A model generated the notes under the pieces. The model saw nothing but the letters and a program-made list of their open reading frames with translations. It was not told the origin of the DNA and searched no databases. 64,000 bases of DNA. It comes from Haliotis rubra (lineage: Eukaryota). The DNA is taken from assembly GCF_003918875.1 (NCBI RefSeq), contig NW_025766248.1, forward strand, positions 1,240,001 to 1,304,000, read 5' to 3'. Within the stretch, counting starts at the first letter, position 1. Every line of letters starts with the position of its first letter. The position numbers and the translations under genes are program-made. Shown here in pieces: positions 1-64,000 of this stretch.

Positions 1-68
1 GAATTGGGTGGAATAACGGTTTTCTTTGATACCGAGATCCTTGATACTTGTGGTACCTTTTGAGAACG

Positions 69-605
69 TCATAGAGCCATTTCAATGATATCTGATCCCA
101 TCTGCAGTACTTGTTGAGTCAAGTCCAGATGAGCCCCCTGGGGAACTAAGAAGTCAAGTCCCAGAAGAGCATCATCTTGAATGGGACCCACTACCACAGT
201 AATCGAATAGGTTTGAGACCCTAGTTGCAACTGGAGTGGTTCTGTCACAAAGGAAGACATATGTAAGTCTCTCCCTGCAGTTCTTAACTTAATGTCCTGT
301 TTCTTCTCGGGTTCCCGTGAGAGTTTCTTATAAAAAGTGTCTGATATTATGGTTACCTCAGCCGCGGTATCCACCACTGCAGGGGTATGCTGGTCCTGGA
401 TTCCGACTGGTACCAAAAACATAGATCCAATTTTTAATTGCCTAACTGTGATCTCTGGAAGTGATGAACTATCTTCTTCCGATGAACTAGTTGACTCATG
501 AGCAATGGACGAAATGCGGGAGGTCATTGAAGGCATGTCATGTCCAGTGGGATCTAACAATGGCAGATATTGTGTCCGAGGATTCTCAACCAGTTGACCA
601 TCCAC
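69..605 (-). pseudogene. Retrotransposon aspartic protease (retropepsin)
   Basis: AVVDTAAEVTIIS catalytic motif and IQDDALLGLDFL C-terminal motif. Confidence 0.9.
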
Positions 606-759
606 AACTTGCAGTTGTTGGCCTTCTTCAACTTGGATCGAGGTTAGGCCTCTGAGCTCGATACGGACATGCTTAAAGCCCCAGTTGCATCTTGTAATGC
701 TTTAACATCCTTTTCCTGTGCATTAAATGTGACCCTTTTCTCTCCTCGTTTACTGAATT

Positions 760-3083
760 GATTGGACAATCTCTGCGAAAATGGCCTGTTTTCCCAGATT
801 TGAATCACTCCCCCGATCTTGTTGGCGATGACGAGTTGCTTCTAAACCTTCGACTCAAGATGGCTGTCAATTTCCGTATGTCTGCTGACATCTCCTCGAC
901 ATTAGCTTCCAGATGGGTCAAACATTCCACCACATTGTACCTTACGGGTTGTGATGAAGTTTGCCGCTTATCCTGAAAAGAGGTGTGATTTGCGACACCA
1001 AGTATTCATCTTCTTCGGAATCATTGGCCAAGTTCGATTGCTTCACATCTCGCCTAATGATTGGTCTACCATAGACTGCCTGAGTGTTCTGGAAGTATTT
1101 CTGTACAGCATCCATGGCTGATTCCAGAGTTGTCAATCCCAGGTTTGAAACATAGTGGGCAGCTTCTGTATTAGCACATCCTTGCCAGAATCTCCGCACC
1201 ACTTGTTGTTCCACAAAGTCATCTAGTAAATCCGGGAATGCAGCAATCGCGACTTGGAGTACACGCTCCGCCCATTCTTCCAAGGACTCGTCTGAGTTCT
1301 GACGAAGGTTTGGAAACTGCAGTTGGGCAGTCTCTGGATGACACTGTTTCCCAAACCGCCTATCAAGTTTCTTCACCATTCCTTGGAATGAGATGAACTC
1401 ATCTCTCTCTAGCAATAAGGCAAAGAAGTCAGCTGCTTTACCAGTTAGGCAGTAACACAACTGATCTACCTTTTCTTCATCCTTCCATGACTGAGAACGA
1501 GCAAAACGTTGAAATTTCATATAAAAGGATGACCATCTTGTACTACCGTCATATACCATCCGCGGTAGTGAAGCTGTTGGTTAATCCCCATGTGCTGGAT
1601 GCCTCCCCACAATATGTTTAGGATGCACCTCATCTAAGTCGCTATCCAAAGAGTAGCCTAATGGTTCTCTCCAGGCGGCTTGATGACGATGATGGAGCTC
1701 TCTGGATCCTGTCTACCCTCTCGTTACGTAAAGGTTTACACATCCTCTGCCTACCTCTGGGGGCAGGTGCGAGACCATCATTAAAATATCCAGAATGATC
1801 CCAGAGTGCCTGGAGTTCCCCGCAACAGATTGGTTTGCGGGCCACAGGATGTGTACCATCCACCCGGCATTAATTAGGACCTTCTCCGGAATAATACTCC
1901 CTTGGCTCATGGTTGATATAGTCTCCATATATCTGAGACCTTTGGGAGCGGGAAAGGTGATGGCTACATTAAGAATGGTCATGTGTGTTTCCATATACAG
2001 CATACTCCCTTAAGGCATGTTTAATCCTAGGGTACACATCTGCATATCTTGACAAACCATGTTCTGTCCCTGATTCCAGATAGATACATTTCCTCTCTAG
2101 GCCCAGCAGGGGTACTGGAAGTAGGAGGCCAAACGGGGTCGCTCCCGTTCTGCTTAGACAGATATACATCTCCTTCTAACTCTCTATCAGAGATTCCCCT
2201 GCTTCTCGATGTTCTCTCCCATAGACTGTCATACCGCTGTCCCTTGGGTGGATGGGGTTTCACGTGTGTTATTCCCCTGGGCTGAGTTAACTAGGATTGG
2301 TTGAGGGGCCATACTTTTGGTTTGGCCTGTTCCCCTCCGTTGCCTATACCCATGGGTTAGAGCATGTCTCTGATGGACATTCCCGTCAGCACCTTGGAGG
2401 ACCCGAGGGTCGACCTCCGCAGTATTGGGCTTTGTTCTTGAACTCTGCCGTGACACGTTCATACCATGTACCACAGAATGAGGGTTGGGCATAGGTGCCT
2501 TGCCAAGACATCGGATCTTTAGGGTTACTGGCTTCCAGATTGGCAAGAACATCAGAAAAAGCTTCCATTTCCCTGTTGAAATCATGAGAGGCCACCTACC
2601 ACTGGTCATAGAGAGCACTATGACTTTGTGGAGTAAGTCCTCTACGCTTGGCCTGCAAGTTGGTTTCCGCATGTTCCAACTGTCTTAAGTTGGACTGAAT
2701 AGCATCAGCGTCAGTACTGGTGACTGGTTTATGGAACCTTAGGTCAGTATCGGACTATCTACCTGGTGTACCTTCGGTGACCGGGGTAAACTGACCATAG
2801 ACTGATTTGGGTCTGGGTTTGGATGGTGCAGCTTTCCCTGAAGCCTGTTGCTCCACCATCCTCGGAGACCAAGAGCCTGCAGTTGAAATACCAGGATATT
2901 CCACAGCAAAAGGGATAGCGCTAAGAGCCTGCTCAGGGTTCCTGGGAGATTACGGAAAACCTCCTCCGTCAGGACACCTAGGCTCTCTCTGAGTTCCACA
3001 ATTTTCCTGGCCAGTTTCATCCCTGTTCACGGAATAAGCCAGAGTTCCTCCTCAGAGCGCAGATTAATAAATACTGGTGGCAT
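760..3083 (-). pseudogene. gag: Disrupted gag: N-terminal HhH, long low-complexity linker, capsid domain, dead zinc knuckle
   Basis: YDGSTRWSSFYMKF...LCYCLTGKAADFF...LRQNSDESLEEWAERV capsid motifs (942-1559); GE*FKSGKTGHFRRDCP is a mutated CX2CX4HX4C at ~766-812; ATG at 3083 is in frame with ORF 2739-3020. Confidence 0.85.
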
Positions 3084-4069
3084 TATTGGATTATCTGAAA
3101 TAATCCAACAACCATATTTAATATCTAAGTTAGTACAAGTTATACATAACCCCATTTTTTGGAACGAATACAGTTGGGAAAGGAACATAAGTGTTCGGGC
3201 CTTCCCTGCAGTATTCTTGCTCTTGTACTACAACCTGAGGTAAGACCAAGCTGACCTATAGGTACTTATATGGTAGGTGTATAACCTTAAACTAACCTAG
3301 CTAAAGAGTTGCCAATATTATGGATAAGACAAACTCTATATATGTCAAAGGATAGAAGGTTGAGGTTACAACCCATGTGACGAGTCTACACCTGAGCAAA
3401 ATAGACCATGGCGGAGAGAAGACCCGAGACATACGATCAACCACAGCCACCACCGATAGAGAACGGATACCAACCCGAACAACACTGTGCTACACGTTGC
3501 TGACAGGGCGAGGCAATGGCAGCAGTTTGCGATGCCCATTGTCCGAAGAAGGATAGAGCACCAGTTGATCGTGAAGAATGTTCCACGTTGCCGAATATAC
3601 TGACTGCGGACCAGTAGAATGTTGCCGTTCGTATGGAGGACAGAGCATTAAAGTGGACGGCATATTGTCTGCAACCGGAATTACAGGCTTCACAAACCAG
3701 AACCAAGTGAACGATATCTTTCCCCGGAGGACAAACAACTCAGACACTAAGCATAAGCTACCCTTACCTAACACTACCAGACTTACAGATGCACACACAC
3801 AACATTGCAGGCAAGATAAAAGAACTGTACCAGCAGTAAACTATGGCAAATGGCATACCCTAGAATAATGTGTACGGTCAGCGGGCGTCCAGCTATGATA
3901 AATATAAAACTAAAGAGCATTGGGTTTTTTACTCTATTAGCCATTGAAAAAGCTTAAAACACTCCATACAGCGAGTTTTGCTCTAAGTAGTATATACAAT
4001 GATTGTCTGAGATCAAGTCCAACAAAAGTCTACCTTGGGGAACAATCACAAATAAAGCTTTTGTCAGGC

Positions 4070-4090
4070 CCTTAGATCTCGCCACCATTG
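4070..4090 (-). promoter_or_regulatory. Putative primer-binding site and LTR 3' end
   Basis: Minus strand reads ...GTATATACA-A-TGGTGGCGAGATC, i.e. LTR-terminal CA followed by a TGG-starting PBS upstream of gag. Confidence 0.5.
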
Positions 4091-4237
4091 TATATACTAC
4101 TTTTGAATCCCTAGTTAACTTCCCGGCCCCACGTGACACAATAGTCTCACAATGACCGCGAACTAGCACTTGACACTATGTCGCTTTGACCTCGAGGAAA
4201 CAGTTTAATGTGAATCGCATATGATCTCTTTGGTGTC

Positions 4238-4775
4238 CTATGTACTTTTTTTTCTCGTCTTCTCTGATAGCAGACTTACGAGACTTGGACCGGATTTCTT
4301 GTTTCATCTTACGGTACTTGTCGAGTTCAGAGAGGATTTAACGAAATTCCTCCTCTGAGATCTTACTGTCAGTGAGTGCTGTGGAAATACTCTCACTTAC
4401 TGTGTTCAGCTTTGCTTCAGCCAGAACCCTGATCTCGTCGTGTTTCAACGCTTTACGATGCAGTCTGCGGGATGCAAACTTAAACACCAACCCTGCCACC
4501 CCTACAACCCCAGCTGTTATTTCAATGCCTAGCACTATAGGTGCGGCCACGATGGTGGCCAACAAACCAACACCTGCCACCCCTAGCCCGATGCTGGTTG
4601 CCATAAGGGCAGTATCAGTCCCGTCCACGATATTGAAAGCTCTATGGTACTTCTTATATAGTGCTTCACGCGTGTCGTGGTCTTGTTCTAGTTGGCGTTT
4701 TACATCACATAACTGTCTCAAGCCGAACCTGTCTACGGTTTCCAATGTCTTCTCGACTTCCTCTACGACTGTGCA
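4238..4775 (-). pseudogene. Hydrophobic-hairpin/coiled-coil protein of Polinton/adintovirus-like elements (resembles the ORF labelled GasderminX in adintoviruses)
   Basis: ORF 4338-4745: TALMATSIGLGVAGVGLLATIVAAPIVLGIE...KHDEIRVLAEAKLNTVSESISTALTDSKISEEEFR; continues in frame past a premature TAA as ILSELDKYRKMKQEIRSK. Family name is from recall. Confidence 0.65.
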
Positions 4776-4913
4776 TATAATAAATTCTAAAAAATATCTT
4801 TAAAAAGTGCATAATTTACGTTTTGCACAGTGTATTTGAAGCTTACAAGTCTTAGACCCTCATACAGGGAAATAAGGGAGAAGGAAAAAGGTAACTTTGC
4901 ATCCACACGAACA

Positions 4914-6376
4914 TCATCGAGGCTTACTGAGGGGACCCGTTGAAGGGTCCGGTTTTATGAGGATACGGCAACGGTCGCCCAGGACTAGGTCGCTATAGTG
5001 TATTATCACCCTGGGTAAAAGTTGCAGTTCTACAGGATCACTCACCCCGAAGTAGACTTCTATGGCTAGTGTGGAGCCTGGTTTCACCTTCATAAGGTCC
5101 AATTGGGAATTGGGTACGTCAAACCTTAACTCGTCCTCCAAGCTTGAAGCAACTAACATGTTACCCGTGTGATACGGGCTTAGTTGAGTACTTATACTAT
5201 ACTTCGGAACGAAACCCCGAACAAGATACCGTTGTTCCTTATTTCGGAGACATACCTTTCGTTGTCAAACGAGATATAAAGTTTGGTGAGCGTCATGCTG
5301 AGCAACCGTTTGGGTTCTATAAAGTGGTCTGGCAGACGACGCCGCACGTACATGCCGTTTCTTAAGTGTAGGACGTACGAGGCGTCTTCCTGGCTTGTCT
5401 CCTAGATCGTTAAGCATGGGGTTGAGTGGATGACTAGTCATTGTTATATTACTATCATAAGATAGTTTCCAACTGTTTTTCTGATAATCTCTCAGGGGTG
5501 CACTTCAACCCCATGAAGTGTATGTTGTCGGGTAGGGAGATCTTGGTGAGTGATATCGTGTCTTCCACGGTTTCGGTGACCCCCTGCAGACTGGTGTGGG
5601 AATCGACACCCACCCGCATGTAAACAGTGCAAATCTGATACTGGTGCCGTTTCACCCACTGGAGTTTGATCCCCTTCACGATTTCGACTTCATCCGGAGA
5701 TGGTTCCCCTAGGTAGACTTTGATGACCAGCGTGGAGTTCGCTGGTAGGCTCACCAGGATGTTGACCATGCCAGCGAATTCAGACACCAACTGCACTCTT
5801 GCACTCCCGGTTTACTCGATAGCATGTGGGCTGCCATACTGGCGACTGGGCTGATAATTACACTACGTCTCTGCAACGGGACATAAGCCACGAGCAGGGT
5901 TCCATTGTTCGCGACTTTATTAGGTAGTTGTCTTTGTTCTCCGTGAACACGTAGGGGGAGCCAAGCCTAATGTTGAGAAACCAGTTGACTTTAGCGGGCA
6001 ACAACACCCACTTGTCGTCGTCGGTGAAGACGAGCGTATATGATTTTTTTCTGGCGATGGTCATGCTATCAACATCTGCTAAGTCAAACAGTTTGCCCCT
6101 GAACGATGGGTGTACCACCCATCTATCATCACGGATGTGGACTAAGTCGAACCTAGTGTTGAGGGCCGCTCCTGAGGTCTCATGTATATTACTTAGGTTT
6201 CTAGTACCACCAATGATGGGGACTTCAACGCGTTTGTAAATGTTGTTATTCAGTTGGAAGGCGTACAGTTTACCATCTTCTCATGGGTCGTCGAATCCGC
6301 GTGTGTCCCCGAGGGCGGAGATCCCCACATTAACGCATTTTCTCAACTTCATCCCTGGACCTTGTGCGCTGGTCAT
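4914..6376 (-). pseudogene. Disrupted ~480-aa ORF directly downstream of penton (fibre/structural-like, internal repeats)
   Basis: ATG overlaps the penton stop (AAATGA); fragments 5858-6118, 5455-5796 and 4914-5159; repeated motif PANSTLVIKVYLGEPSP / KPGSTLAIEVYFGVSDP. Confidence 0.5.
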
Positions 6377-7016
6377 TTTATGTGCAGCGTAATCCTGAGT
6401 TATCCTATATTCACAGTATTATCTAACACCGATATTACCAACTCAGGGATTGTGCCCCGAGTTAACCTCTTGTACTGCCCCGATGAAAACGACTCGGTTC
6501 TACCGTCGTTGTATTTCTCCATTTTCACGGATACGGCTCTCAGTATCATGGAAGGCTGGCCCCCTTGAATGTTGTTAGTCATGCTCAACTGACCGAGATG
6601 AATGCACAGCTCTCGGTACGGTACTAGGTCGGGTAACTTCGTGCCTGTGACGGTAGTTGTGGGTTTTATCTCATCAGGCGGTATACCGAGTGTCCTTGCC
6701 AGTGGTCGACAAAGCCTCAAGGGGTTTATTCTGTTGTTGGTTAACACCACTGTGCTGATTGAGGCATATATCTTGAGTTCGGCTCCCAAGGGTTTGAAGA
6801 CCTCGTCGCTTAGCGAGCACACGCTGCAGTAGCCGGCAGTTATCTGGTTGTGGGCGCCACTAACGAACAGCTTGTTGTTGTTGGTGTTGATGTTTATCCA
6901 TCGCGGGACATAGTTGATATCGCAGAGTGCGACTTCAAGTTGACCCGACGTGTTATCAATCGCGTGCATCACCTAAACAGACACCCCCTCGTTATTCCCG
7001 GTAGTGTTATGTGCAT
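6373..7016 (-). pseudogene. Penton/minor capsid protein (single jelly roll), Polinton/adintovirus type
   Basis: MHITLPGI start at 7016 (frameshifted), LEVALCDINYVPRWINI motif, ILRAVSV..F...YKRL..GTIPELVISVLD, and in-frame C-terminus G*LRITLHIK. Confidence 0.75.
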
Positions 7017-14953: not shown

Positions 14954-15135
14954 ACACGTGAAGATCCGGATTAGAATTGGTCTTCAGCAACCCATGCATG
15001 TCGTAAAAGGCGACTAACGGGATCGGGTGATCAGACTCGCTGGCTTGGTTGACAGCACGTCATCGTATCCCAATTATGGAGATCACTGGATTGTCTGGTC
15101 CAGACTCGATTATTTTCAGACTGCCGCCATATAGC
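14954..15135 (+). mobile_element. SINE-like family A copy (internal deletion)
   Basis: Same consensus as other A copies. Confidence 0.85.
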
Positions 15136-16816: not shown

Positions 16817-17860
16817 GATTTATAAGTAGAAGGCTATACGAAGCGTGAACATACTGCATAGTTTAAATTCAAAGTAGGAAATGTAAATAAGCCATTATCT
16901 CTCTGCTGAGTTTATCATATGTTGGATTTTCAATTGAAAATATCCTTTAGTTATCGATAATATGTAAGAAGACCCCCAAAAACTGTTCTAGCACTTAACC
17001 AACACACGTTTATATTAAATAAATGAAAAATTTAGTTAAAACCTGTTTAGAATCAAAACTAAATTTCTACAGTACAAACTGCTGATGAGTTTGTTATTCA
17101 TAATTTCTTATAAAGTCAAAACACATTTTGATTTTTGGGCCAAATGTAAACTATTTCAAATATGCTCGGGGTATGTGGTAAATTTGTCTTCATTGAATCA
17201 TTTTTACACAAAATTACCCAACCACTGAATGATGGGTTAATAGCGAAAATACAATCTAATAACAGTTATTTCAATTTTCATTTACACAAAAAAGGAAGAA
17301 CTCACTATATTTTCTTTTGCCCCTCACTTATTTTGAATAGAATAACATGGTTACTAAATGAGAAGTGTCAGATCACAACACGCAACCGCCTGAACTCGGC
17401 GAAATATTAGTATCAACCACTATCTGTGACTTTATAATTAACGGATCGCCAGTGGAGAGTTAACCACGCCCACAAAAGTAAGGGAGATAACTCTCAAAAG
17501 GTCCGACAACATAGCTGTCAAAACCAACTGTCAAAATGGCAGTCGTGATATCGTTTCGAGACATTCCGGATGACATTCGTTGGCCCGAAATATTTGCCTA
17601 ATGAACCGACCTTTCGACAAAAACAACGTGGTATGGCTTTTAGTTCGGCCTCATACCTTCATTCCGTTACTTTTCATTCATTTTGTGATACTATCGTGGC
17701 GATTTGGGGGAAGATTTATAGAAGTCAACGGAAATCCAAAGCTCCAAACCTATCCTTTGACAGAATGTTAATTATTAATTAACAGGCGGTCGTTAATTAA
17801 CCATTCTCAAGCACTGCACTGAGAAACAACGACGTTATCTCAGGATCTTTGATGTTCCGT

Positions 17861-18118
17861 CAGACGTTACATATGTTGTATCTTGCATAACACCTTTTCT
17901 GTAAAGTACAGATTCTAGTACTTTTTGTGGTTGAATTCCATCCGGGATTCGAACCAACACTCACAGGGTCAGGCACTTATCACCAGCACGCAAAGTGAGC
18001 AGTCTAACCCACTCAGCAATCGCGGCATCCCGTACTAGAATCTGTACTTTATTGAGAAAGTATAATCCAAAATATACCATGCTGCGTCTGACCCCAATCT
18101 AAATGACATTGTCTATTC
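17861..18118. mobile_element. Family C (tRNA-headed, inverted dimer), older copy
   Basis: Minus copy with tRNA-like head 17861-18030 joined to a plus tail 18032-18118; GTTCCGT flanks both sides. Confidence 0.75.
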
Positions 18119-20189: not shown

Positions 20190-20434
20190 CCCGTGAAGAT
20201 CCGAGTTAGAATATTTATCTTCAGTAACCCATGCTTGTCGTAAGAGGCGACTAACGGGTTCGGGTGGTCAGGCTTTCTGGCTTGGTTGACACATGTCATC
20301 GATTCCCAATTGCGCAGATCGATGATCATGCTGTTGATGAATGGATCGTCTGGTCCAGACTCGATTATTTACAGACCGCCGCCATATAGCTGGAATATTG
20401 CTGAGTGCGGCGTAAAACTGAACTCACTCAGACA
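20190..20434 (+). mobile_element. Full-length SINE-like family A copy with TSD
   Basis: 13-bp TSD CTCAACAAAACTA (20177-20189 and 20435-20447). Confidence 0.92.
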
Positions 20435-27245: not shown

Positions 27246-27738
27246 GTGAGTGGCAAGTGAGTGAGTAAGTGAGTTTTTACGCCACACTCAGCAATATTCC
27301 AGCTTTATGGCGGCGGCCTGTAAATAATCGAGTCTGGACAAGACAATCCAGTGATCAACATCATGATCATCGATCTGCGCAATTGGGAACCGATGACATG
27401 TGTCAACCAAGCCAGCGAGCCTGACCACCCGATCCCATTTTAAAGACATATCTGTCAGGTTCACTGATATGGTTGATGCATGTCATCGTATCCCTGTTCC
27501 ACCCGAACTGTGTTAATCTGTGGGCAAGCAGGACAGCCCTTTCTATAATCGCCTCTGGACTCCCAGAAATCCGTGAAGATCCGGGTTAGAATTGGTCTTT
27601 AGCAACCCATGCTTGTCGGCCTCGCTGACTTGGTTGATACAAGTCAACGTATTCCAGTTGTGTAAATGGATGCTCATGCTTAATTTGATCACTGGAATAT
27701 TGCTGAGTGCGGCGTTAAATAACAAACAAACAAACAAA
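27246..27738. mobile_element. Two family A copies (minus 27246-27437, plus 27570-27738)
   Basis: Consensus match; (TCAC)n and (CAAA)n tails. Confidence 0.85.
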
Positions 27739-31812: not shown

Positions 31813-33923
31813 TACAAGGACAACATGCCATAAGGACTGCATGCCATAAGGACTACAGGCCATACATTCTACTCGATATGCATACTACATACCAGAAAGA
31901 AGTTAGGCCATAACATATGCATATCATAAGTACTACAATAATACCCAGTCAGTCTGATTGACATTTTACAGTTTTATTTTTCGGACCTCGTACTTAATTA
32001 ATAACTTTGCTGAAATCAATATCCAACCAGCATTAATAGATAAAATAATTAAAGAAGTCTAGAATTCTTCTTAATTATGCTGTCAATATATTTTTTTTAT
32101 AAAAAGGTGTGTGATTTGTTTTTACCTTTGTGTCTAATCACAGCGGATTTCTTCGCACATTTCTTTGAAAATTCGTAAATTCCTGTAGAATTATTTTCCA
32201 TTCTTCCTTAGAGTCTACGGTTTTAATCACGCGATAAATGACTTGGAAGAAATTCACACATACCGTGCCCCTTCCCGCAGTAGTTCAAGTAACCAAGGAA
32301 ACGATAACCGAAGTGAAGAGATCGGAAAATACCCATGAAACACATCCATATTGTTGTAGTGGTTGGACCTCGTTATTTAATTCATAGTTTTGTTGAGATC
32401 GATTTCTAACTACCATTCACCCTAGGGGCCACTTTTCAACGTTTCACATCTTACAGCCAGTTGTTTAGTTATTGATCAGCTAAACATTCAGTATCGATTA
32501 TTAAGAGACCCAGAGCCACAGGGTATCGTTCTGATTAATAAACATTTGTTAACATTATTATGAACATCGATTCGTTGTCACAGCACAAACAGTGCGTGCG
32601 TATCATTGGTGTAAACACTTAAACATGACATACATGGTTTTTTTGACAGTTACTTTTTTATCACATACGTGTTCTGAATATCTTTTATGAGATAATTTTG
32701 GTTATTTTAAGCAGGAGTTGTGTAACCAGTTGAACGTTATCCAACGAGTGTAACCAAACTAGGTTATTCAACGATAGTGACGTCATCATGCCGAACTTTC
32801 TGCTGCCACCTCGATATTTTAAATTAACATAATAACTCCATTCAAGCAGCTTTTGACCAAAAATATCCACCAAACAAAACAATAGTTTTGTGGATGATTA
32901 AAATTCAGTTTTGGTGTACTGGGGACTAGTAGGTTTGGACATTTTTAATTGTCTATTTTCATATATAAAGTAGTCGCGAGAGAGTTACCTCCCTTTCATT
33001 TTGTTTACATCTGGCATCGTCTGCTTGATTTGTCATCATGGATCACACTGTTGTCCCGTCGTTTGTAATAAATACATTCCAAAACGAGTGAATGTTGAAT
33101 ATGGCAAAATATTCACAAAAATAACTCAAACGGTTTGATTTATCCTCAAGCAAAAACGAGTGAATACATGAAAACGTTCAGAAATATTGAGTTGGAATAT
33201 TTTCCATGTTCAACATCCATCCGTTCTATATATATGGTCCTGATCATGACCAGTTTCTCGAAGGCAATGCAATTGCGCATACAGAGTTAGGTCCCGTAGA
33301 TCTTAGGATCCGCTGATGATTAGTACGAATTTGTTCGTCCTGTTTATAGTTCATCGAGTGTTATACTCGTCATACATAAATGGGGACATGCCTTTAACCT
33401 ATCTCACTTATGACGTTCCTTCCAAGTTAAACTGATCATCCGTCGCTGCGATTATTAAACCTATGTTCTAAGCGGAGTTACGAATAACTCACTCACTCAC
33501 CCTCTCACTCACTCACTCTCTCACCCACCCTCTCACTCACTCATTCATTTACTCATAATAGATGGTCCACATTTGCTATGCACTATCTAACATATCTCAA
33601 TCGAAAGCTGGAATTACCCTCTCGCTGAAGAATTACTATTTATACCAACATTGGTAAGTCATAAAGCATAACTCCAGAGGACGTACAGCTCTTGGGGCAG
33701 TCCCCCTGGGGAGGTAGGGTTGACGGGTGACTCTCGGTCAGTGCTTCTCTCGTCAGTGGAAATGAATCTCGGGCATTTCACGAACACCTGTCTCAACAGA
33801 TCAGGAGTGATTTCGAAATCTGTGTTTCCCTGCATGCAATTATTCAACAACCCGAGAGACAAAACAGCCGAAGCTACCAGTTTAGGTACTTACACTGAAG
33901 AGCTGATGTTAAGATCGAAAGAT

Positions 33924-34258
33924 CTAACTTATGTTATATTTGGGATTACACTTTCTTTGTAAAGTACAAATTCTAGTATTTTTGGGGTTGAGTCCCATCC
34001 AGGATTCGAACCCACACCATCGGAGTCAGGCACCTAATCGCCAGCACACAAGGTCAGCCGCCTAACCCGCTCAGCCACCGCGACTTCCTCCGGCTGACTT
34101 TAAGTGCTGGGGATTAGGTGCCTGACTGAGGGTGTGGGTTCGAATCCCGGATGGGACTCAACCCCAAAAGTACTAGAATTTGTACTTTACTAAGAAAGTG
34201 TAATCCCAAATATAACATATGTTACATTTGACCACTTTCTAAATGGCATTGTGTAATC
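33924..34258. mobile_element. Family C head-to-head inverted dimer with 10-bp TSD
   Basis: Arms ~33925-34061 and ~34091-34224 are inverted copies; tRNA-Leu/Ser-like head GTCGCGGTGGCTGAGCGGGTTAGGCG...GTGGGTTCGAATCC; ATCGAAAGAT at 33914-33923 and 34259-34268. Confidence 0.88.
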
Positions 34259-34602
34259 ATCGAAAGATATGTGTCAAAAATGAAGCGACAAAAACTTATT
34301 CCCTACAAAAAAATCTCTTGTTTGTAAGCATTGGACTCAGAACCAGACAATCCAGTGAAAAACATAATGTTCTTGTTAAACATTGTTAGACCGGAGGAAC
34401 CATTTTAAATGACATACAAAGTAGTGATCAATAACCTAATTTCCGTTCCGCAATTCGCCTACAGTCTTAAAACAACATTTCATGGTCTGTTGACTTTTGA
34501 TTACGCAATGATAACCTAGTGTCACTCACTATGATCTAACAGTGGACTCTTCTAGTTGAAGTAGTTGATGGACAAAAAGATGGACAAGAAGAATTTATTT
34601 AG

Positions 34603-36149: not shown

Positions 36150-36397
36150 ATCCGTGAAGGTCAGGGTTAGACTATTGATCCTCAGTAACCCATGGTTGTC
36201 GTAAGAGGCGACTAACGGGATCGGGTGGTCAGTCTCGCTGACTTGGTTGACACTTGTCATCGGTTCCCAGTTGCGCAGATCGATGCTCATGCTGTTGATC
36301 ACTGGATTGTCTTGTCCAGACTCGATTATTTACAGACCGCCGCCATAATGCTGGACTATTACTGAGTGCGGCAAGAAAACTAAACTCACTCACTCAC
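36150..36397 (+). mobile_element. Full-length family A copy with TSD, followed by (GT)n at 36426-36462
   Basis: TSD TATGAAAAATG. Confidence 0.92.
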
Positions 36398-41689: not shown

Positions 41690-41846
41690 AATCCAATGAT
41701 CAACAGCATGAGCATCGACCTGCGCAATTGGGAACCGATGACATGAGTCAACCAAGCCAGCGAGCCTGACCACCCGATCCCGTTAGTCGCCTCTTACGAC
41801 AAGCATGGGTTACTGAAGGTTCATTCAAACCCGGACCTTCACGGGT
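41690..41846 (-). mobile_element. Family A copy, 5' half
   Basis: Consensus match. Confidence 0.88.
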
Positions 41847-42116: not shown

Positions 42117-44747
42117 TGGAATTCTTTATTAAAGGCGGACTCCGTTGTACAATTCCGACTAAAACACAAGCATTCCTATATGAATCTCTATCAAACAGTA
42201 ATGGCACCAGATGTTGGCAAAACGGTTAGTGTACTTTAAAACTAAGCGGCTGTCAACAGCACATGTTCAGCAAACAATTTGATTTCTTTGAGTGAAAACC
42301 GGTCACAAATTACTTTTCTCTCACCTTTTGTTTTTCAAGTTACGCTTCTAAAAATAATATCAGCCCGTTCTACGCCCCCGACCTCAGAAGAGCAGATGGT
42401 CGGTAAGCATTTAATCCAGACTTCGAGACGTAAAGTTACATGTTTTTCAGTTTCGTTTGACATTAACGTATTAAAAAATCTGATACATACAAATCCTTTG
42501 AACTGACTAGGTGCCATGAAGGATTAGATTTTGAAATAGCGCTTTGATTTAGCACATGTAATTGAAACGTCCACTGGTGGTCAGTGTTAAGTTTCATTCG
42601 AAGGAACCTGCCCCATGATGAAACGCCGTCGCTATCAAAGGTTGCGTGATTGAAATGATGACTTAAATTTCTAATTGTCAGATTTCTTTTCATCTCAAGC
42701 ACTATCCCTTCCACAACAACGCCGAATGTCTACACGTTACATCCTACAGAGATACCACTCGTAATGCAAGACTGGCCTTTTCATTGCAGGCTTAATAATG
42801 ACCTGTGATTCTTGGACAAGAGTTGTTTGATCTGAAGGAACATGTGGGGGCTTTGACGCTTTATTGATTTTTATAACAATTACTTTTTTAGGTTTTACTT
42901 TAATAAATGTCATCCCTAGATTTGGAGTTTGGTGTCAGGTGAGTAAAATATGTTTGAAATGTTGCGTGACTTCATCCACATCTTCAATGCCTGCATTAAC
43001 AAGCCAGCAGTGGTATATACTCAGCGAACCCATTTGCCATCCACTCCCCACTGTGCATGCTGTTATCAGCCAACATGATGACATGTTAATGTTAGCAATG
43101 TCATATTATAGAATTGCTAAATTATCTTGCCATGGTATTTCATTGTCACAGTTCTTCAATGTTCAAATGATTGATTAATCTGTGATTTGAAATGGTAGTC
43201 AGCAACCCAGCCACGTCGTTAGGGAGACTTACAGGACTGGGTGGTCAGGCACGCTGACTTGGTTGACAGTGTCATCGTATCCCTGTTACGTAGATCGATG
43301 TTCATGATGTCAATCACTGGATTGTCTGATCCAAACGCAATCCATTTACAGATCGCCGTTCCATAGCGGTAATATTGTATAGCGTTAAAGTAAAAAACAA
43401 AGTACAACCCCACACAAACGAACCAAAACACCCAGATCTAGATCTAGAAGGCTGTTGTTCATTATAGTCCACTTCAATGGAGGCAGGTTCTACTTTCACT
43501 TCATTTATGCTAATACAGTGACAATTCCCACTGCTCTATTTCAAATAAATCATCCTTATGTGTAATTAGTATTTATGGAAGCAAAACCGTTAAACCTGTC
43601 TGTGTGCGGAGTGAATACACACAGCTTGTTAGTACTTAGTTGTGTTGATAGCAAACATTTCACGCGTAGGTTGAGTACATTTGTTTGTTGAGTGTATTCT
43701 GTATACATGGAATCAATTCTTCAGCTGTAGAAACGAATCCATCCAACTGGCTCGGTTTCAATGAGCGATGTAAGACAAACTTTACTTTAATCAAAAGCAT
43801 TGATTATTGCTATTCTTTGCCTCCTACTGTCATCTACTAAAATGATTCTGATTCTGGCCCACATGTTTTGATGGATTTGATGGAAAATAGTCTATTTCCA
43901 CCATCCGAGGTCACCATGGAAACAACAGGACGTATTTACTCAAGTTAACGGTTTCAGTCGGGATGTCTAGAAATTCTAACAATGTTGATCATTATTACCA
44001 AATGTAAAAACCCATCTACTTTACTTATTGGTAATATTCTAAGTATGAGATGGTTTAAAGAGTCAGACAATAGCATATGATGTAAGTTTTCGAAATACCC
44101 TGACCACATCTTACCAAGAGACGCTGAAAGATTTACATCAACCTTATTTCACCTTAGCGCCTCTTTTCGAAACTTTGGATAAGGTGGTGATTCAGAAAGT
44201 GAATTGCCAGACATAGAACACACATCTTGCTATCTCAGGATCAAAGTGTTTTAAGGACGCCTGTGATAAAACAGTCCTTAAACATTTTATGAGTGAGTGA
44301 GTGAGTTAAAATGTATCGTGACATCGGCAATATTTCAGCCATATCGTGACGTGTCTTTTCTTGGATAGAAAGGAAGGTGTTTAATGACTTGCGAGATCGT
44401 CGAACGACTCGGAGCGAACATCAGTGTATTAAAAATACCATTTTGATTATTTTGCTGTATTGGCAACTATTCTAAATTACATTAAGCTCAGTCCTCCGTA
44501 CTTACATTAAATGACTGTGAGTGGAAGGACGTGTGTCGCGTCAGAAGTCATCGATTTAGTTTGCACATAACATATTCCAGTAGAGACATATTTTAATAAA
44601 TGCGCAATTTAAGAGCGAAAATTGACTTGCCATATATTTGTCAAACAGACGGTAGTATTTGTTTTTTCTCAAGAGAGTTAAAACTTGCTCTTCCGATTTC
44701 GGAGTCCGTCATAGCTTCTAAATGCACCAGTATCCCTTCTCCCAAAG

Positions 44748-48100: not shown

Positions 48101-48445
48101 GATGTAACAAACTAGAAAACTAGAATACGCCCCTAAATACCTGGTTTTGGCACTTGGAGTTTGGATTCATATTTTTGTAGTTTTTTATTTAGCCTTGAAT
48201 ATGAGGCATCCTGGCATGCGCGTGTTGAACAACAACAAACCAACAAGGTAGCGTTTCCAACGTGATGTATAGATAATTAGAGCTGGTTGTCGGGGTTTTA
48301 CACAAGGAAATAACAGAAAAATCCTATCTAACTGCTCGGTCAGCTGATGGAGATTGTTTGCTTGCTTGTTTAACGGCGCACACAGCAATATTCAAGCTAT
48401 GTGGTGGTGGTCTATAAATATTCAAGTAATAACAGCATGATCATC

Positions 48446-48882
48446 AATGAAATACACAATGCCATTTAGAAAGTGCTCAAATGTAACATATGTTATATTT
48501 GGGATTACACTTTCTTTGTAAAGTACAGATTCTCTTACTTTTGTTGGGTTGAGTCCCGTACTAGAATCTGTACTTTACAAAGAAAGTTTGACCACTTTCT
48601 AAATGGTATTGTGTATTTCATAGCTTTTGGCCTTGGGAGCCGTGCCAATTAACACTTATCAGAGGGGTACACAAAGTCCGCAGTCTAGACTACCAGCTGT
48701 CCGACTTCCATTTTTGTGGAAGCCGCGGTGGCTGACCGGTTTAGGCGTCTGACTTTGTGTGCTGGCGATTAGGTGCCTGACTCTGAGGGTGTGGGTTCGA
48801 ATCATGGATGGGACTCAACTCAACAAAAGTACTAGAATCTGTATTTTACAAAGAAAGTGTAATCCCAAATATAACATATGTT
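48446..48882. mobile_element. Family C inverted plus tandem array with 14-bp TSD
   Basis: Inverted tail 48447-48557, then tail-spacer-head-tail 48558-48882; TSD 48432-48445 and 48883-48896. Confidence 0.88.
48609..48675 (-). ncRNA. Degenerate type I hammerhead-like motif
   Basis: UUGUGUA..CUGAUAAG-[hairpins]-CAAAAGCUA^UGAAAUACACAA; distal helix I UUGUGUA/UACACAA; palindromic AGCU helix III; G8 and G12 are A in this copy. Confidence 0.45.
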
Positions 48883-49086
48883 ACAGCATGATCATCGATC
48901 CACACAATGGGGATACGATGACGTGTCATCCAAGTCAGCGAGCCTGAACACCCGACCCCGTTAGTCGTCTCTTACGACAAGCATGGGTATGCTGAAGACT
49001 AACCTGGATCTTCACGGGTAGCACCGTAACATGTACTTATTTTCACCCCAACGTTTTGTTTGAATTTTGTGCAAAAAAATAAGCAC

Positions 49087-55292: not shown

Positions 55293-55511
55293 TGGGTTAA
55301 TAAAATGTGGTCTTCAGTAACCCGTGCTTGGCGTAAGAGACGACTAACGGGATCGGGTGGTCAGGCTTGCTGACTTGGTTGACACATGCCATCATATCCC
55401 ACTTGCGTTGATTGATGCTCATGCTGTTGATCACTGGTTTGCCTGGCCGAGACTTGATGATCAGACCGCCATCATTTAGCAGGAATATTACTGAGTGCGG
55501 CGTTTAACAAA
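55293..55511 (+). mobile_element. Family A copy
   Basis: Consensus match. Confidence 0.8.
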
Positions 55512-56610: not shown

Positions 56611-56775
56611 GACCCGTGAAGGTCCGGGTTGGAATGAACCTTCAGTAACCCATGCTTGTCGTAAGAGGCGACTAACGGGATCGGGTGGTCAGGCTCGCTG
56701 GCTTGGCTGACACATGTCATCGGTTTCCAATTGCGCAGATCGATGCTCATGCTGTTGATCACTGGATTGTCTGGT
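56611..56775 (+). mobile_element. Family A copy, 3'-truncated at (TA)n
   Basis: GACCCGTGAAGGTCC start. Confidence 0.88.
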
Positions 56776-59200: not shown

Positions 59201-59446
59201 GTACTTAATTCATTTTGTAAAGTTTACATATTTTCTAAAAGTCTGTTGTGCCGAATCATAGGGAGAACATAGGAATATTTATTTATGTAAGGCAATCAAT
59301 GATGTGTCTGTGATAGTCGACAAGAGTCGGATCAAGAATTCTGGCGGTAATTGCATAAGCTTTAAGTGGAGTTGATGGATTAAGTGAGATGTGACAATCG
59401 GTAAAGGTTGCAAGATTCTGATGAATCTGTGCTTTAATATTACAAG

Positions 59447-59680
59447 AGACCTGTAAAGATCAGAAAGCTTAGAAGTGGTCTTCAGCAATCCAAGCTTGTC
59501 GTATAATGGGGACTAACAGGATTGGGTGGTCAGGCTCGCTGTCTTGGTTGACACATGTTATCTGATCCCCTTTTGCGTAGATCGATGGTCATGATGCTGG
59601 TCACTAGATTGTTTGGTTCAAACTCGATGATTTACAGACCGTCGCCACATAGCTTGAATAAACAAACAAACAAACAAACA
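59447..59680 (+). mobile_element. Family A copy, diverged, (CAAA)n tail
   Basis: Consensus match. Confidence 0.8.
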
Positions 59681-60919: not shown

Positions 60920-61165
60920 AGTGAGTTTAGTTTTATGCCGCACTCAGCAATATTCCAGCTATATGGCGGCGGTTTGTAAATAATCAAGTCTGGACCAGAC
61001 AATCCAGGGATCATGATCAACAGCATGAGCATCGATCTGCACAATTGGGAACCGATCACATGTTTCAACCAAGTCAGCGAGCCTGACCACCCGGTCCCGT
61101 TAGTCGCCTCTTACGACAAGCATGGGTTACTGAAGATCAATATTCTAACCCGGACCTTCACGGGT
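60920..61165 (-). mobile_element. Full-length family A copy with TSD
   Basis: TSD CTTTACGATGGAGTG. Confidence 0.92.
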
Positions 61166-63843: not shown

Positions 63844-64000
63844 TCGGGTTAGAATATTGATCTTCAGTAACCCATGCTCGTCGTAAGAGGCGATTAACGG
63901 GATCGGATGGTCAGGCTCTCTGACTTGGTTGACACACGCCACACGTCACGGTTCCCAATTGCGTAGATCGATGATCATGCTGTTAATCACTGGATTGTCT

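What the first reader, a model, noticed from the sequence alone, without database searches (positions are those of the whole stretch)
48446..48882. Ambisense retrozyme candidate: hammerhead on one strand, Pol III tRNA-like gene on the other
Seen: this locus shows a circularly permuted ~300-nt monomer (tail-spacer-head-tail). The plus strand has tRNA-Leu/Ser-like A and B boxes from 48720 and a TTTTT just before the head, so a Pol III transcript could span one monomer. The minus-strand spacer reads UUGUGUA-CCCCU-CUGAUAAG...GGCC-AAAAGCUA^UGAAAUACACAA: a hammerhead-like core with loopless palindromic AGCU helix III and a 7-bp distal helix I. The predicted cut (48621/48620) coincides with where the element ends at 48447 and 34258, and approximately at 18118. 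Knowledge: Penelope pLTRs and metazoan non-LTR retrozymes use minimal type I hammerheads in tandem monomers of a few hundred nt and yield circular RNAs. Inference: a retrozyme-like circRNA replicon with a built-in antisense Pol III unit, a combination I do not know to be described. Caveats: G8 and G12 are A in this copy, proximal helix I is unpaired, and helix II has an extra hairpin.
Basis: partly seen in the sequence, partly recalled or inferred. Interest (0 to 1): 0.85.

Follow-up and report, generated by a model that had tools for sequence, protein, structure and literature searches.

The report
tRNA-SINE inserted Penelope-style, no hammerhead
The locus is one copy of a very abundant 299-base jumping element with a tRNA-like head. 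Its insertion scars match those left by Penelope-like retroelements, and the proposed hammerhead ribozyme on the opposite strand fails every test run here.

Summary

The unit (window 48587-48885) has thousands of copies in this 1.38-Gb animal genome. Some are short 1.1-1.9-unit inserts with 7-16 bp target-site duplications. Others are tandem arrays of up to about 30 units.

Strand polarity argues against the retrozyme reading. The constant ends are 3' ends of the tRNA-sense strand. They fall at two sites 35 nt apart, the unit end and +29..39, and the 5' ends are scattered. Fifteen of 25 head-to-head inverted inserts carry one end of each kind. Partial tandems, an inverted truncated copy and a 30-40 bp tail at one end are the published signature of Penelope-like element (PLE) integration.

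The hammerhead is not supported:
- It lies on the non-template strand.
- G8 is A in about 95-98% of copies, and apparently in three species labels.
- Helix II is not a single stem.
- No Rfam hammerhead model matches, even in the seven copies that carry G8.

The PLE partner was not identified.

The parts
48432..48448 (.). Left copy of the target-site duplication (ACAGCATGATCATCAAT). Its last bases overlap the element end by microhomology.
   Evidence: family D3, 17 nt, 94%; L001 row
48447..48557 (-). Inverted, 5'-truncated arm covering unit positions 224-299 plus the 35-nt tail (unit 1-35). Its 3' end is at 48447, which is RT start site 2.
   Evidence: (I1, I2)
48558..48621 (+). Start of the direct arm: unit 243-272, then a 27-nt internal deletion, then unit 1-35 (the tail sequence).
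48622..48717 (+). The 'spacer' (unit 36-131), a conserved part of the family unit lying 3' of both RT start sites. It includes the T5 run at 48711-48715, just upstream of the head.
48609..48680 (-). Judged not to be a ribozyme.
48716..48810 (+). tRNA-derived head. Box A is at 48729-48739 (10 of 11 to TRGCNNAGTGG in the family majority). Box B is at 48794-48804 (GGTTCGAATCC in the majority). Related copies are called tRNA-Thr(TGT)-like by ARAGORN.
48810..48885 (+). Tail up to the unit end (...ATATGTTACA), which is RT start site 1 and the 3' end of the direct arm.
48883..48899 (.). Right copy of the target-site duplication (ACAGCATGATCATCGAT).
33924..34258 (.). Older copy of the same family, a head-to-head inverted pair. 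The minus arm runs from the head (34088) to the unit end (33925). The plus arm is 34091-34258 and ends with the 35-nt tail. Flanked by ATCGAAAGAT at 33914-33923 and 34259-34268. It has no spacer.
17860..18117 (.). Oldest of the three copies (about 79% identity), also a head-to-head pair. The minus arm is 17866-18030 (head to unit end). The plus arm is 18032-18117 and ends with the tail.

Best explanation
Window 48447-48885 is a single insertion, flanked by a 14-17 bp target-site duplication. It belongs to a high-copy, tRNA-derived non-autonomous retroelement whose unit is 299 nt (48587-48885).

The template is the plus-strand (tRNA-sense) RNA. It most likely starts about 11 nt upstream of box A, from the internal Pol III-type promoter. 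Longer multi-unit transcripts come from tandem source loci.

The element is most likely copied into DNA by the reverse transcriptase/endonuclease of a Penelope-like element (PLE):
- Reverse transcription starts internally at one of two sites 35 nt apart, the unit end and about +35.
- Both target strands are used. This gives a 5'-truncated direct arm, often longer than one unit (a partial tandem), and an adjacent inverted 5'-truncated arm. The 35-nt tail is present on only one of the two arms.

The spacer lies 3' of the RT start sites. I infer that it is the RNA module that recruits the RT.

The hammerhead-like string on the minus strand is incidental. Its pieces lie in the complement of the plus-strand stem-loops around RT start site 2.

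Shown: family membership, unit structure, target-site duplications, the two 3'-end clusters, scattered 5' ends, asymmetry of the inverted arms, a discrete 5' end at the head, and absence of G8.

Inferred: Pol III transcription, a PLE as the mobiliser, and the role of the spacer.
For: - Family size and arrays: 2,253-6,795 first-look candidates, with arrays of up to about 30 units.
- Target-site duplications of 7-16 bp flank both simple and inverted inserts.
- Of 103 segments, 3' ends fall at the unit end (about 45) and at +29..39 (about 30). The 5' ends are spread over the whole unit.
- Of 25 head-to-head composites, 15 have one end of each kind, 1 has two unit ends and 0 have two tail ends. 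Inner junctions differ from locus to locus, so these are independent events.
- The head 19-mer has 657 exact hits. In about one third of the first 100 listed, unrelated DNA precedes the head, usually directly before GT-GGAAGCC. This marks a discrete 5' end about 11 nt upstream of box A. The older window copies start there as well.
- ARAGORN calls tRNA-Thr-like genes in several units.
- The plus-strand region around the two start sites is structured: -34.0 against -23.3 +/- 3.7 kcal/mol for shuffles.
- Published PLE signature: 5' truncation, partial tandems, an adjacent inverted truncated copy, and a 30-40 bp tail at one end (PMC8557442). In vitro, two adjacent internal RT start sites bracket the tail, both strands are cleaved and extended, and the hammerhead is dispensable (PMC11167929).
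- The genome has at least 70 GIY-YIG matches, with open frames of up to 1,064 aa. Several lie in close inverted pairs.
Against: - No autonomous PLE sharing the tail or spacer was identified.
- The T5 run before each head should stop Pol III, so the RNAs behind inserts longer than one unit need read-through or another polymerase.
- ARAGORN and Rfam do not call a tRNA in the majority sequence or in the window copy.
- No usable RNA data: the runs are contigs only and their RNA status is a guess.
Confidence: 0.7

Rival explanations
1. Ambisense retrozyme. Minus-strand transcripts self-cleave by a minimal, dimer-forming type I hammerhead at 48621/48620. They circularise and serve as retrotransposition intermediates, while the plus strand carries a Pol III unit.
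For: - The family majority has C3, U4, G5, A6, A9, GAAA (G12 restored), a palindromic AGCU and a 7-bp distal helix I.
- The core and helix I blocks are slightly more conserved (0.99) than the rest of the unit (0.92-0.96).
- One terminus cluster includes the predicted cut.
- The tandem, dispersed architecture resembles non-LTR retrozymes (PMC7229834).
Against: - The G8 position is A in 102 of 104 aligned copies and in 143 of 150 exact-pattern matches genome-wide. No variant is reported at 48657 in contigs from three species labels. C3 is unchanged, so the C3-G8 pair is not compensated. G8C or C3G abolishes activity in a PLE hammerhead (PMC11167929).
- Helix II is two hairpins, not one stem, and the fold is no better than shuffles.
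- No Rfam hammerhead match, even in the seven copies that carry G8.
- The constant ends are 3' ends of the opposite strand. A second end 35 nt upstream is at least as common, and the cluster spans about 10 nt.
Confidence: 0.03
2. Ordinary LINE-mobilised tRNA-SINE. The tail is borrowed from a stringent-type LINE. Inversions come from twin priming, and tandems from unequal crossing-over or template switching.
For: - tRNA-like head, variable target-site duplications and 5' truncation.
- The partner is unidentified, so a LINE cannot be excluded.
Against: - Twin priming predicts that the outer end of the inverted arm adjoins, in sequence, the inner start of the direct arm. Here the outer end is fixed at about +35 or at the unit end, whatever the inner junction.
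- There is no poly(A) or microsatellite 3' end.
- Two fixed starts 35 nt apart, with the tail on one arm only (15:1:0), are described for PLEs and stated not to occur in TPRT of non-LTR elements (PMC8557442).
Confidence: 0.15
3. The spacer is a decayed relic of a real hammerhead-bearing sequence (a PLE pLTR or an older retrozyme), captured in antisense orientation and no longer catalytic.
For: - Only one core position differs from the hammerhead consensus in the family majority.
- A loopless palindromic helix III is typical of PLE and retrozyme hammerheads.
- The relaxed descriptor is rare by chance: 0.2 expected per 64 kb.
Against: - No family member or subfamily with a canonical, model-detectable hammerhead was found.
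- PLE hammerheads lie on the sense strand, upstream of the RT start sites.
- A strict-core descriptor hit elsewhere in the same window (59418) also lacks any support, so such strings do arise by chance.
Confidence: 0.08

Closest known systems
Penelope-like elements (PLEs) and their insertion signature (Craig et al. 2021, PMC8557442; Frangieh et al. 2024, PMC11167929)
   Same: 5' truncation, partial tandems, an adjacent inverted 5'-truncated copy, a 30-40 bp tail at one end only, two RT start sites that bracket the tail, and use of both target strands.
   Different: The element encodes no RT or endonuclease and is only 299 nt. It has a tRNA-derived head where a pLTR promoter and hammerhead would be. 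Sequence homology to any PLE was not shown.
Metazoan non-LTR retrozymes (Cervera and de la Pena 2020, PMC7229834; Li, Clavereau and Pollet 2026 preprint, 10.64898/2026.07.22.740005)
   Same: Small (170-400 nt) non-autonomous units in short tandem arrays dispersed in the genome, GC below 50%, target-site duplications longer than 4 bp, and presumed PLE dependence.
   Different: The defining type I hammerhead in each unit is missing. The only look-alike lacks G8 and lies on the non-template strand. A tRNA-like Pol III module is present, and circular RNA has not been shown.
tRNA-derived SINEs (SINE2/tRNA), including mollusc SINE families (Matetovici et al. 2016, PMC4758252)
   Same: tRNA-like head with A and B boxes, a discrete 5' end just upstream of the head, a tRNA-unrelated tail, target-site duplications and very high copy number.
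   Different: There is no poly(A) or simple-repeat 3' end. There are two internal RT start sites. Inserts are partial tandems and inverted pairs, and a 96-nt conserved segment lies 3' of the RT start sites.
Schistosome Sm-alpha and newt satellite 2, which are tandem or SINE-like repeats with active hammerheads (from my own knowledge, not checked here)
   Same: Tandem or dispersed repeats of about 330 nt. Sm-alpha combines Pol III boxes with a ribozyme.
   Different: In those repeats the hammerhead is canonical, active and on the transcribed strand. Here it is neither canonical nor on the template strand.

Membership tests
Hammerhead ribozyme (type I, minimal or PLE-like) | Conserved core: C3 U4 G5 A6 N7 G8 A9 ... 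G12 A13 A14, A15.1-U16.1, H17 | tested here: not met
   G8 is A in 102 of 104 aligned copies and in 143 of 150 exact-pattern matches. C3 is unchanged, so there is no compensation. G12 is A in the window copy but G in the family majority.
Hammerhead ribozyme (type I, minimal or PLE-like) | Three-way junction with a single helix II closing on the core and a helix I that brackets the cut | tested here: not met
   The helix II segment folds as two separate hairpins. The 5 nt next to the core in helix I are unpaired. The fold energy equals that of shuffles.
Hammerhead ribozyme (type I, minimal or PLE-like) | Match to curated covariance models | tested here: not met
   No hammerhead family matched: E<=10 in the window copy, E<=1 in 16 copies, E<=10 in 7 copies with G8. 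Caveat: loopless helix III variants may score poorly, and the genome-wide RF00163 search gave no positive control.
Hammerhead ribozyme (type I, minimal or PLE-like) | Self-cleavage | not testable with these tools
   Needs in vitro transcription of minus-strand monomer and dimer.
Non-LTR retrozyme | Tandem 170-400 nt units, dispersed, non-coding, with target-site duplications | tested here: met
   299-nt unit, inserts of 1.1-1.9 units with target-site duplications, and arrays of up to about 30 units.
Non-LTR retrozyme | A functional hammerhead in each unit, on the transcribed or template strand | tested here: not met
   See the hammerhead rows above. The template strand is the plus strand, and the motif is on the minus strand.
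Non-LTR retrozyme | Unit-length circular RNA | not testable with these tools
   Only assembled contigs of uncertain RNA status were available.
PLE-mobilised non-autonomous element | Partial tandems, an adjacent inverted 5'-truncated copy, and a 30-40 bp tail at one end only | tested here: met
   (15:1:0 asymmetry; 35-nt tail), compared with PMC8557442 and PMC11167929.
PLE-mobilised non-autonomous element | Sequence shared with the region around the RT start sites of an autonomous PLE in the same genome | not tested
tRNA-derived SINE (SINE2/tRNA) | tRNA-like head with A and B boxes and a defined 5' end at the head | tested here: met
   Box A matches 10 of 11 positions and box B is perfect in the family majority. 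tRNA-Thr-like calls were made in several units. There is a discrete 5' end about 11 nt upstream of box A.
tRNA-derived SINE (SINE2/tRNA) | Mobilised by a LINE whose 3' end it shares; 3' end with poly(A) or a simple repeat | tested here: not met
   There is no A-rich or microsatellite end. The ends are two fixed internal sites. The partner is unknown.
tRNA-derived SINE (SINE2/tRNA) | Transcription by RNA polymerase III | not testable with these tools
   Needs Pol III ChIP or inhibitor experiments.

The most novel reading that the evidence does not exclude
This is a ribozyme-free counterpart of animal retrozymes: a Pol III, tRNA-headed SINE that parasitises a Penelope-like element. The tRNA module sets the RNA 5' end and the T5 run sets the 3' end. 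Together they take the place of the hammerhead-bearing pLTR in defining unit-length RNA. The conserved 96-nt segment 3' of the two RT start sites is the RT-recruitment module. This would be the first described SINE-PLE partnership with a small-RNA-gene head.
Probability: 0.35. Interest if true: 0.65.

Novelty: new variant of a known kind. Interest (0 to 1): 0.45.

Why it matters
SINEs are by definition LINE parasites. The only non-autonomous partners proposed so far for PLEs are the hammerhead-bearing retrozymes. A very abundant, young, tRNA-headed family with a complete PLE insertion signature would show that PLE machinery can be hijacked through a Pol III promoter and without a ribozyme.

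It would also provide thousands of natural insertion junctions for studying three features of PLE integration: the two-site internal initiation, the use of both target strands, and the strict rule that the tail sits on one arm only.

On the practical side, hammerhead-like strings next to element termini in such families should not be read as retrozymes without checking strand and core.

Tried and rejected
- Rfam scans of the window (gathering threshold), the locus (E<=10), 16 other copies (E<=1) and the 7 copies with G8 (E<=10) found only hairpin (miRNA-like) matches caused by the inverted arms. No hammerhead and no tRNA family matched.
- A genome-wide RF00163 search returned nothing, and nothing in the control genomes either, so it is uninformative.
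- Public runs: 24 were listed and 4 were laid. All are assembled contigs of guessed RNA status. They show no ends, no strand and no reliable joints. They show only that the family, with C at 48628 and no variant at 48657, occurs under three species labels.
I did not try another route.
- ORFs of 170 aa or more in the window include LTR-retrotransposon gag and protease at 69-1559. No PLE was found.
- Twin priming by a LINE, a foldback/MITE and a Helitron were each considered. They were rejected on the fixed and unequal outer ends, the variable arm lengths and the variable target-site duplications.
- A TTTT Pol III stop right after the tail (48625-48628) is private to this copy. The family majority reads TTTC there.
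- Literature searches for a tRNA-headed SINE mobilised by a PLE found none. The library is incomplete, so this does not prove that none exists.

Full report
**What is at the locus**

Window 48447-48885 is bounded by a direct repeat of the flanking DNA: ACAGCATGATCATCAAT at 48432-48448 and ACAGCATGATCATCGAT at 48883-48899. The flanks on either side belong to a different high-copy repeat, 48368-48431 and from 48883 onward. Another locus (L004) shows that repeat running uninterrupted across the equivalent point. The whole 435-bp block therefore arrived as one insertion with a 14-17 bp target-site duplication.

Inside the block, a BLAST of the region against the window and against genomic copies defines a 299-nt unit, M = 48587-48885:
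- M1-35 is the end of the tail.
- M132-215 is a tRNA-like head.
- M216-299 is the tail.

The block is built as follows:
- 48447-48557 is an inverted arm (M224-299 plus M1-35).
- 48558-48885 is a direct arm (M243-272, a 27-nt deletion, then M1-299).

**The family**

The spacer junction alone finds 2,253 first-look candidates in the 1.38-Gb genome. The 40 that were scored are 96-98% identical. A 1.85-unit query finds 6,795 candidates, including long tandem arrays. One is C2605:495.5-504.8 kb, about 30 units at 86-88% identity. Another is a pair of inverted arrays on C2627.

The window copy differs from the family majority at 12 of 299 positions. The two other window copies (33924-34258 and 17860-18117) are older, at 90% and 79% identity. 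They consist of head plus tail only, starting at M132, with no spacer.

**Which strand is the template**

In 26 loci I read the junctions directly. Target-site duplications of 7-16 bp flank both simple inserts and head-to-head inverted pairs.

Over 103 independent segments:
- The plus-strand 3' ends fall in two clusters: the unit end (M293-299 plus 1-6 nt of apparent overrun, about 45 segments) and M29-39 (about 30 segments).
- The 5' ends are scattered over the whole unit.

Constant 3' ends with variable 5' ends are the mark of target-primed reverse transcription of plus-strand (tRNA-sense) RNA.

The head start 19-mer has 657 exact matches. In about one third of the first 100 listed, non-family DNA precedes it, usually directly before GT-GGAAGCC. 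This marks a discrete 5' end about 11 nt upstream of box A, where a type-2 Pol III promoter would start. The older window copies begin at the same point.

In the family majority, box A matches the consensus at 10 of 11 positions and box B is perfect. ARAGORN calls tRNA-Thr(TGT)-like genes in several units. The window copy and the majority sequence are not called. A T5 run sits immediately before the head in most copies.

**The insertion signature**

Many inserts are 1.1-1.9 units long, which makes them partial tandems. Many also have a 5'-truncated copy in inverted orientation abutting the 5' side. The inner junctions differ from locus to locus, so each was made at insertion.

Of 25 such composites:
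- 15 have one arm ending at the unit end and the other ending 35 nt further on.
- 1 has two unit ends.
- 0 have two extended ends.
- 9 have one unclassifiable end.

Craig et al. describe exactly this for PLEs. They report strong 5' truncation and partial tandems forming pseudo-LTRs. They also report an inverted 5'-truncated copy adjacent at the 5' end, and a 30-40 bp tail often present at only one end. They state that this is not seen in TPRT of non-LTR elements (PMC8557442).

Frangieh et al. studied a purified Anolis PLE protein. They showed that it cleaves and extends both target strands. Reverse transcription starts at two adjacent internal sites of the RNA, and these sites bracket the tail. 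The hammerhead was dispensable for insertion (PMC11167929).

The plus-strand RNA around the two sites here is significantly structured: -34.0 against -23.3 +/- 3.7 kcal/mol for shuffles. Site 1 lies in a hairpin nested inside an 8-bp stem, and site 2 lies at the next stem-loop.

The genome carries at least 70 GIY-YIG matches with open frames of up to 1,064 aa. Several form close inverted pairs. I could not fetch them, so the partner remains unidentified. PLE dependence rests on the signature alone.

**The hammerhead**

In the family majority the G12 position is G: C at M42 in 85 of 101 copies, with the window copy showing a CpG-type change. This also removes the TTTT that the window copy has at that point.

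The G8 position is A in 102 of 104 aligned copies. Genome-wide exact-pattern counts are 143 with A and 7 with G. C3 is invariant, so the C3-G8 pair is not compensated. In contigs of runs under three species labels, 48628 reads C, and no variant is reported at 48657 despite coverage.

The canonical CUGANGA motif occurs nowhere in the majority sequence on either strand. The segment that should form helix II folds as two separate hairpins. The 5 nt of helix I next to the core are unpaired. The whole minus-strand segment is no more stable than shuffles, at -17.1 against -16.2 +/- 3.2 kcal/mol.

No Rfam hammerhead model matches the window copy at E<=10, 16 other copies at E<=1, or the seven natural copies that carry G8 at E<=10. 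One caveat applies: loopless helix III variants may be scored poorly by these models. My genome-wide RF00163 search gave no positive control.

A relaxed descriptor finds two hits in the window against 0.2 expected. The second hit, at 59418-59475, has a strict core but no other support, so such strings do arise by chance.

Finally, the motif lies on the strand that is not the template. The terminus it was meant to explain is one of two, is spread over about 10 nt, and is a plus-strand 3' end.

**Verdict**

It is wrong about the ribozyme, and therefore about the ambisense circRNA replicon.

The element is best described as a tRNA-derived SINE with a PLE-type integration signature. The library I searched describes retrozymes as possible PLE-dependent 'SINEs' (PMC8969392). 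I found no tRNA-headed example there, which does not prove that none exists.

An earlier follow-up in this scan (s1-335065) reached the same conclusion on another piece of this genome and names the host as an abalone. I reached my reading before seeing that note. From memory, the assembly size and contig number fit a published Haliotis assembly. I did not test this.

**Limits**

- The sample of copies was chosen through the spacer and through long arrays, so proportions are not genome-wide estimates.
- I built a majority-rule sequence of this non-coding, non-viral repeat in scratch files, only to score positions. It is not reproduced here.

Noticed in passing
window 59418-59475 (+): A second hammerhead-like descriptor hit, this one with a strict CUGAUGA...GAAA core, a palindromic AGCU and a helix I of 7 bp or more. 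No Rfam support, and helix II does not close on the core. It lies antisense to the end of a copy of the other abundant repeat. Probably chance.
   Followed up: partly
window 48368-48431 and 48883-49000; further copies at 15028-15084, 20265-20334, 27358-27427, 27621-27680, 36226-36295, 41703-41772, 43242-43310, 55358-55427, 56686-56755, 59527-59596, 61020-61089, 63908-63983: A different, very abundant short repeat with at least 12 partial copies in 64 kb at 77-83% identity. It is the target into which the studied element inserted.
   Followed up: no
G000:C2605:495585-504769; G000:C2627:111289-113304 (-) and 113350-115359 (+): Long tandem arrays of the 299-nt unit: about 30 units at 86-88% identity, and a pair of about 7-unit arrays in head-to-head orientation. 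These are satellite-like source loci or array expansions of the SINE.
   Followed up: partly
L057-L063 (for example G000:C302:1318793-1318841): Seven family copies carry G at the hammerhead G8 position and so have a complete canonical core. They are scattered single copies and still match no hammerhead model.
   Followed up: partly
G000:C2347:648755-649015 (-) / 649306-649566 (+); C2216:270809 (-) / 272700 (+); C253:3453 (-) / 6427 (+); C57:69568 (-) / 70445 (+): GIY-YIG endonuclease matches occur in close head-to-head pairs, as expected for PLE insertions with an inverted truncated copy. They are candidates for the autonomous partner.
   Followed up: no
window 69-1559 (-): ORFs with retrotransposon gag (PNMA / Retrotrans_gag) and aspartyl protease domains, a fragment of an LTR retrotransposon at the window start.
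   Followed up: partly
target-site duplications of the family: Many of the duplications end in AT or ATT (for example ...GAATT...AAATT...CATCAT...GCTAT...AAGAT). This recalls the ATT cleavage preference reported for the Anolis PLE. It was not tested statistically.
   Followed up: no
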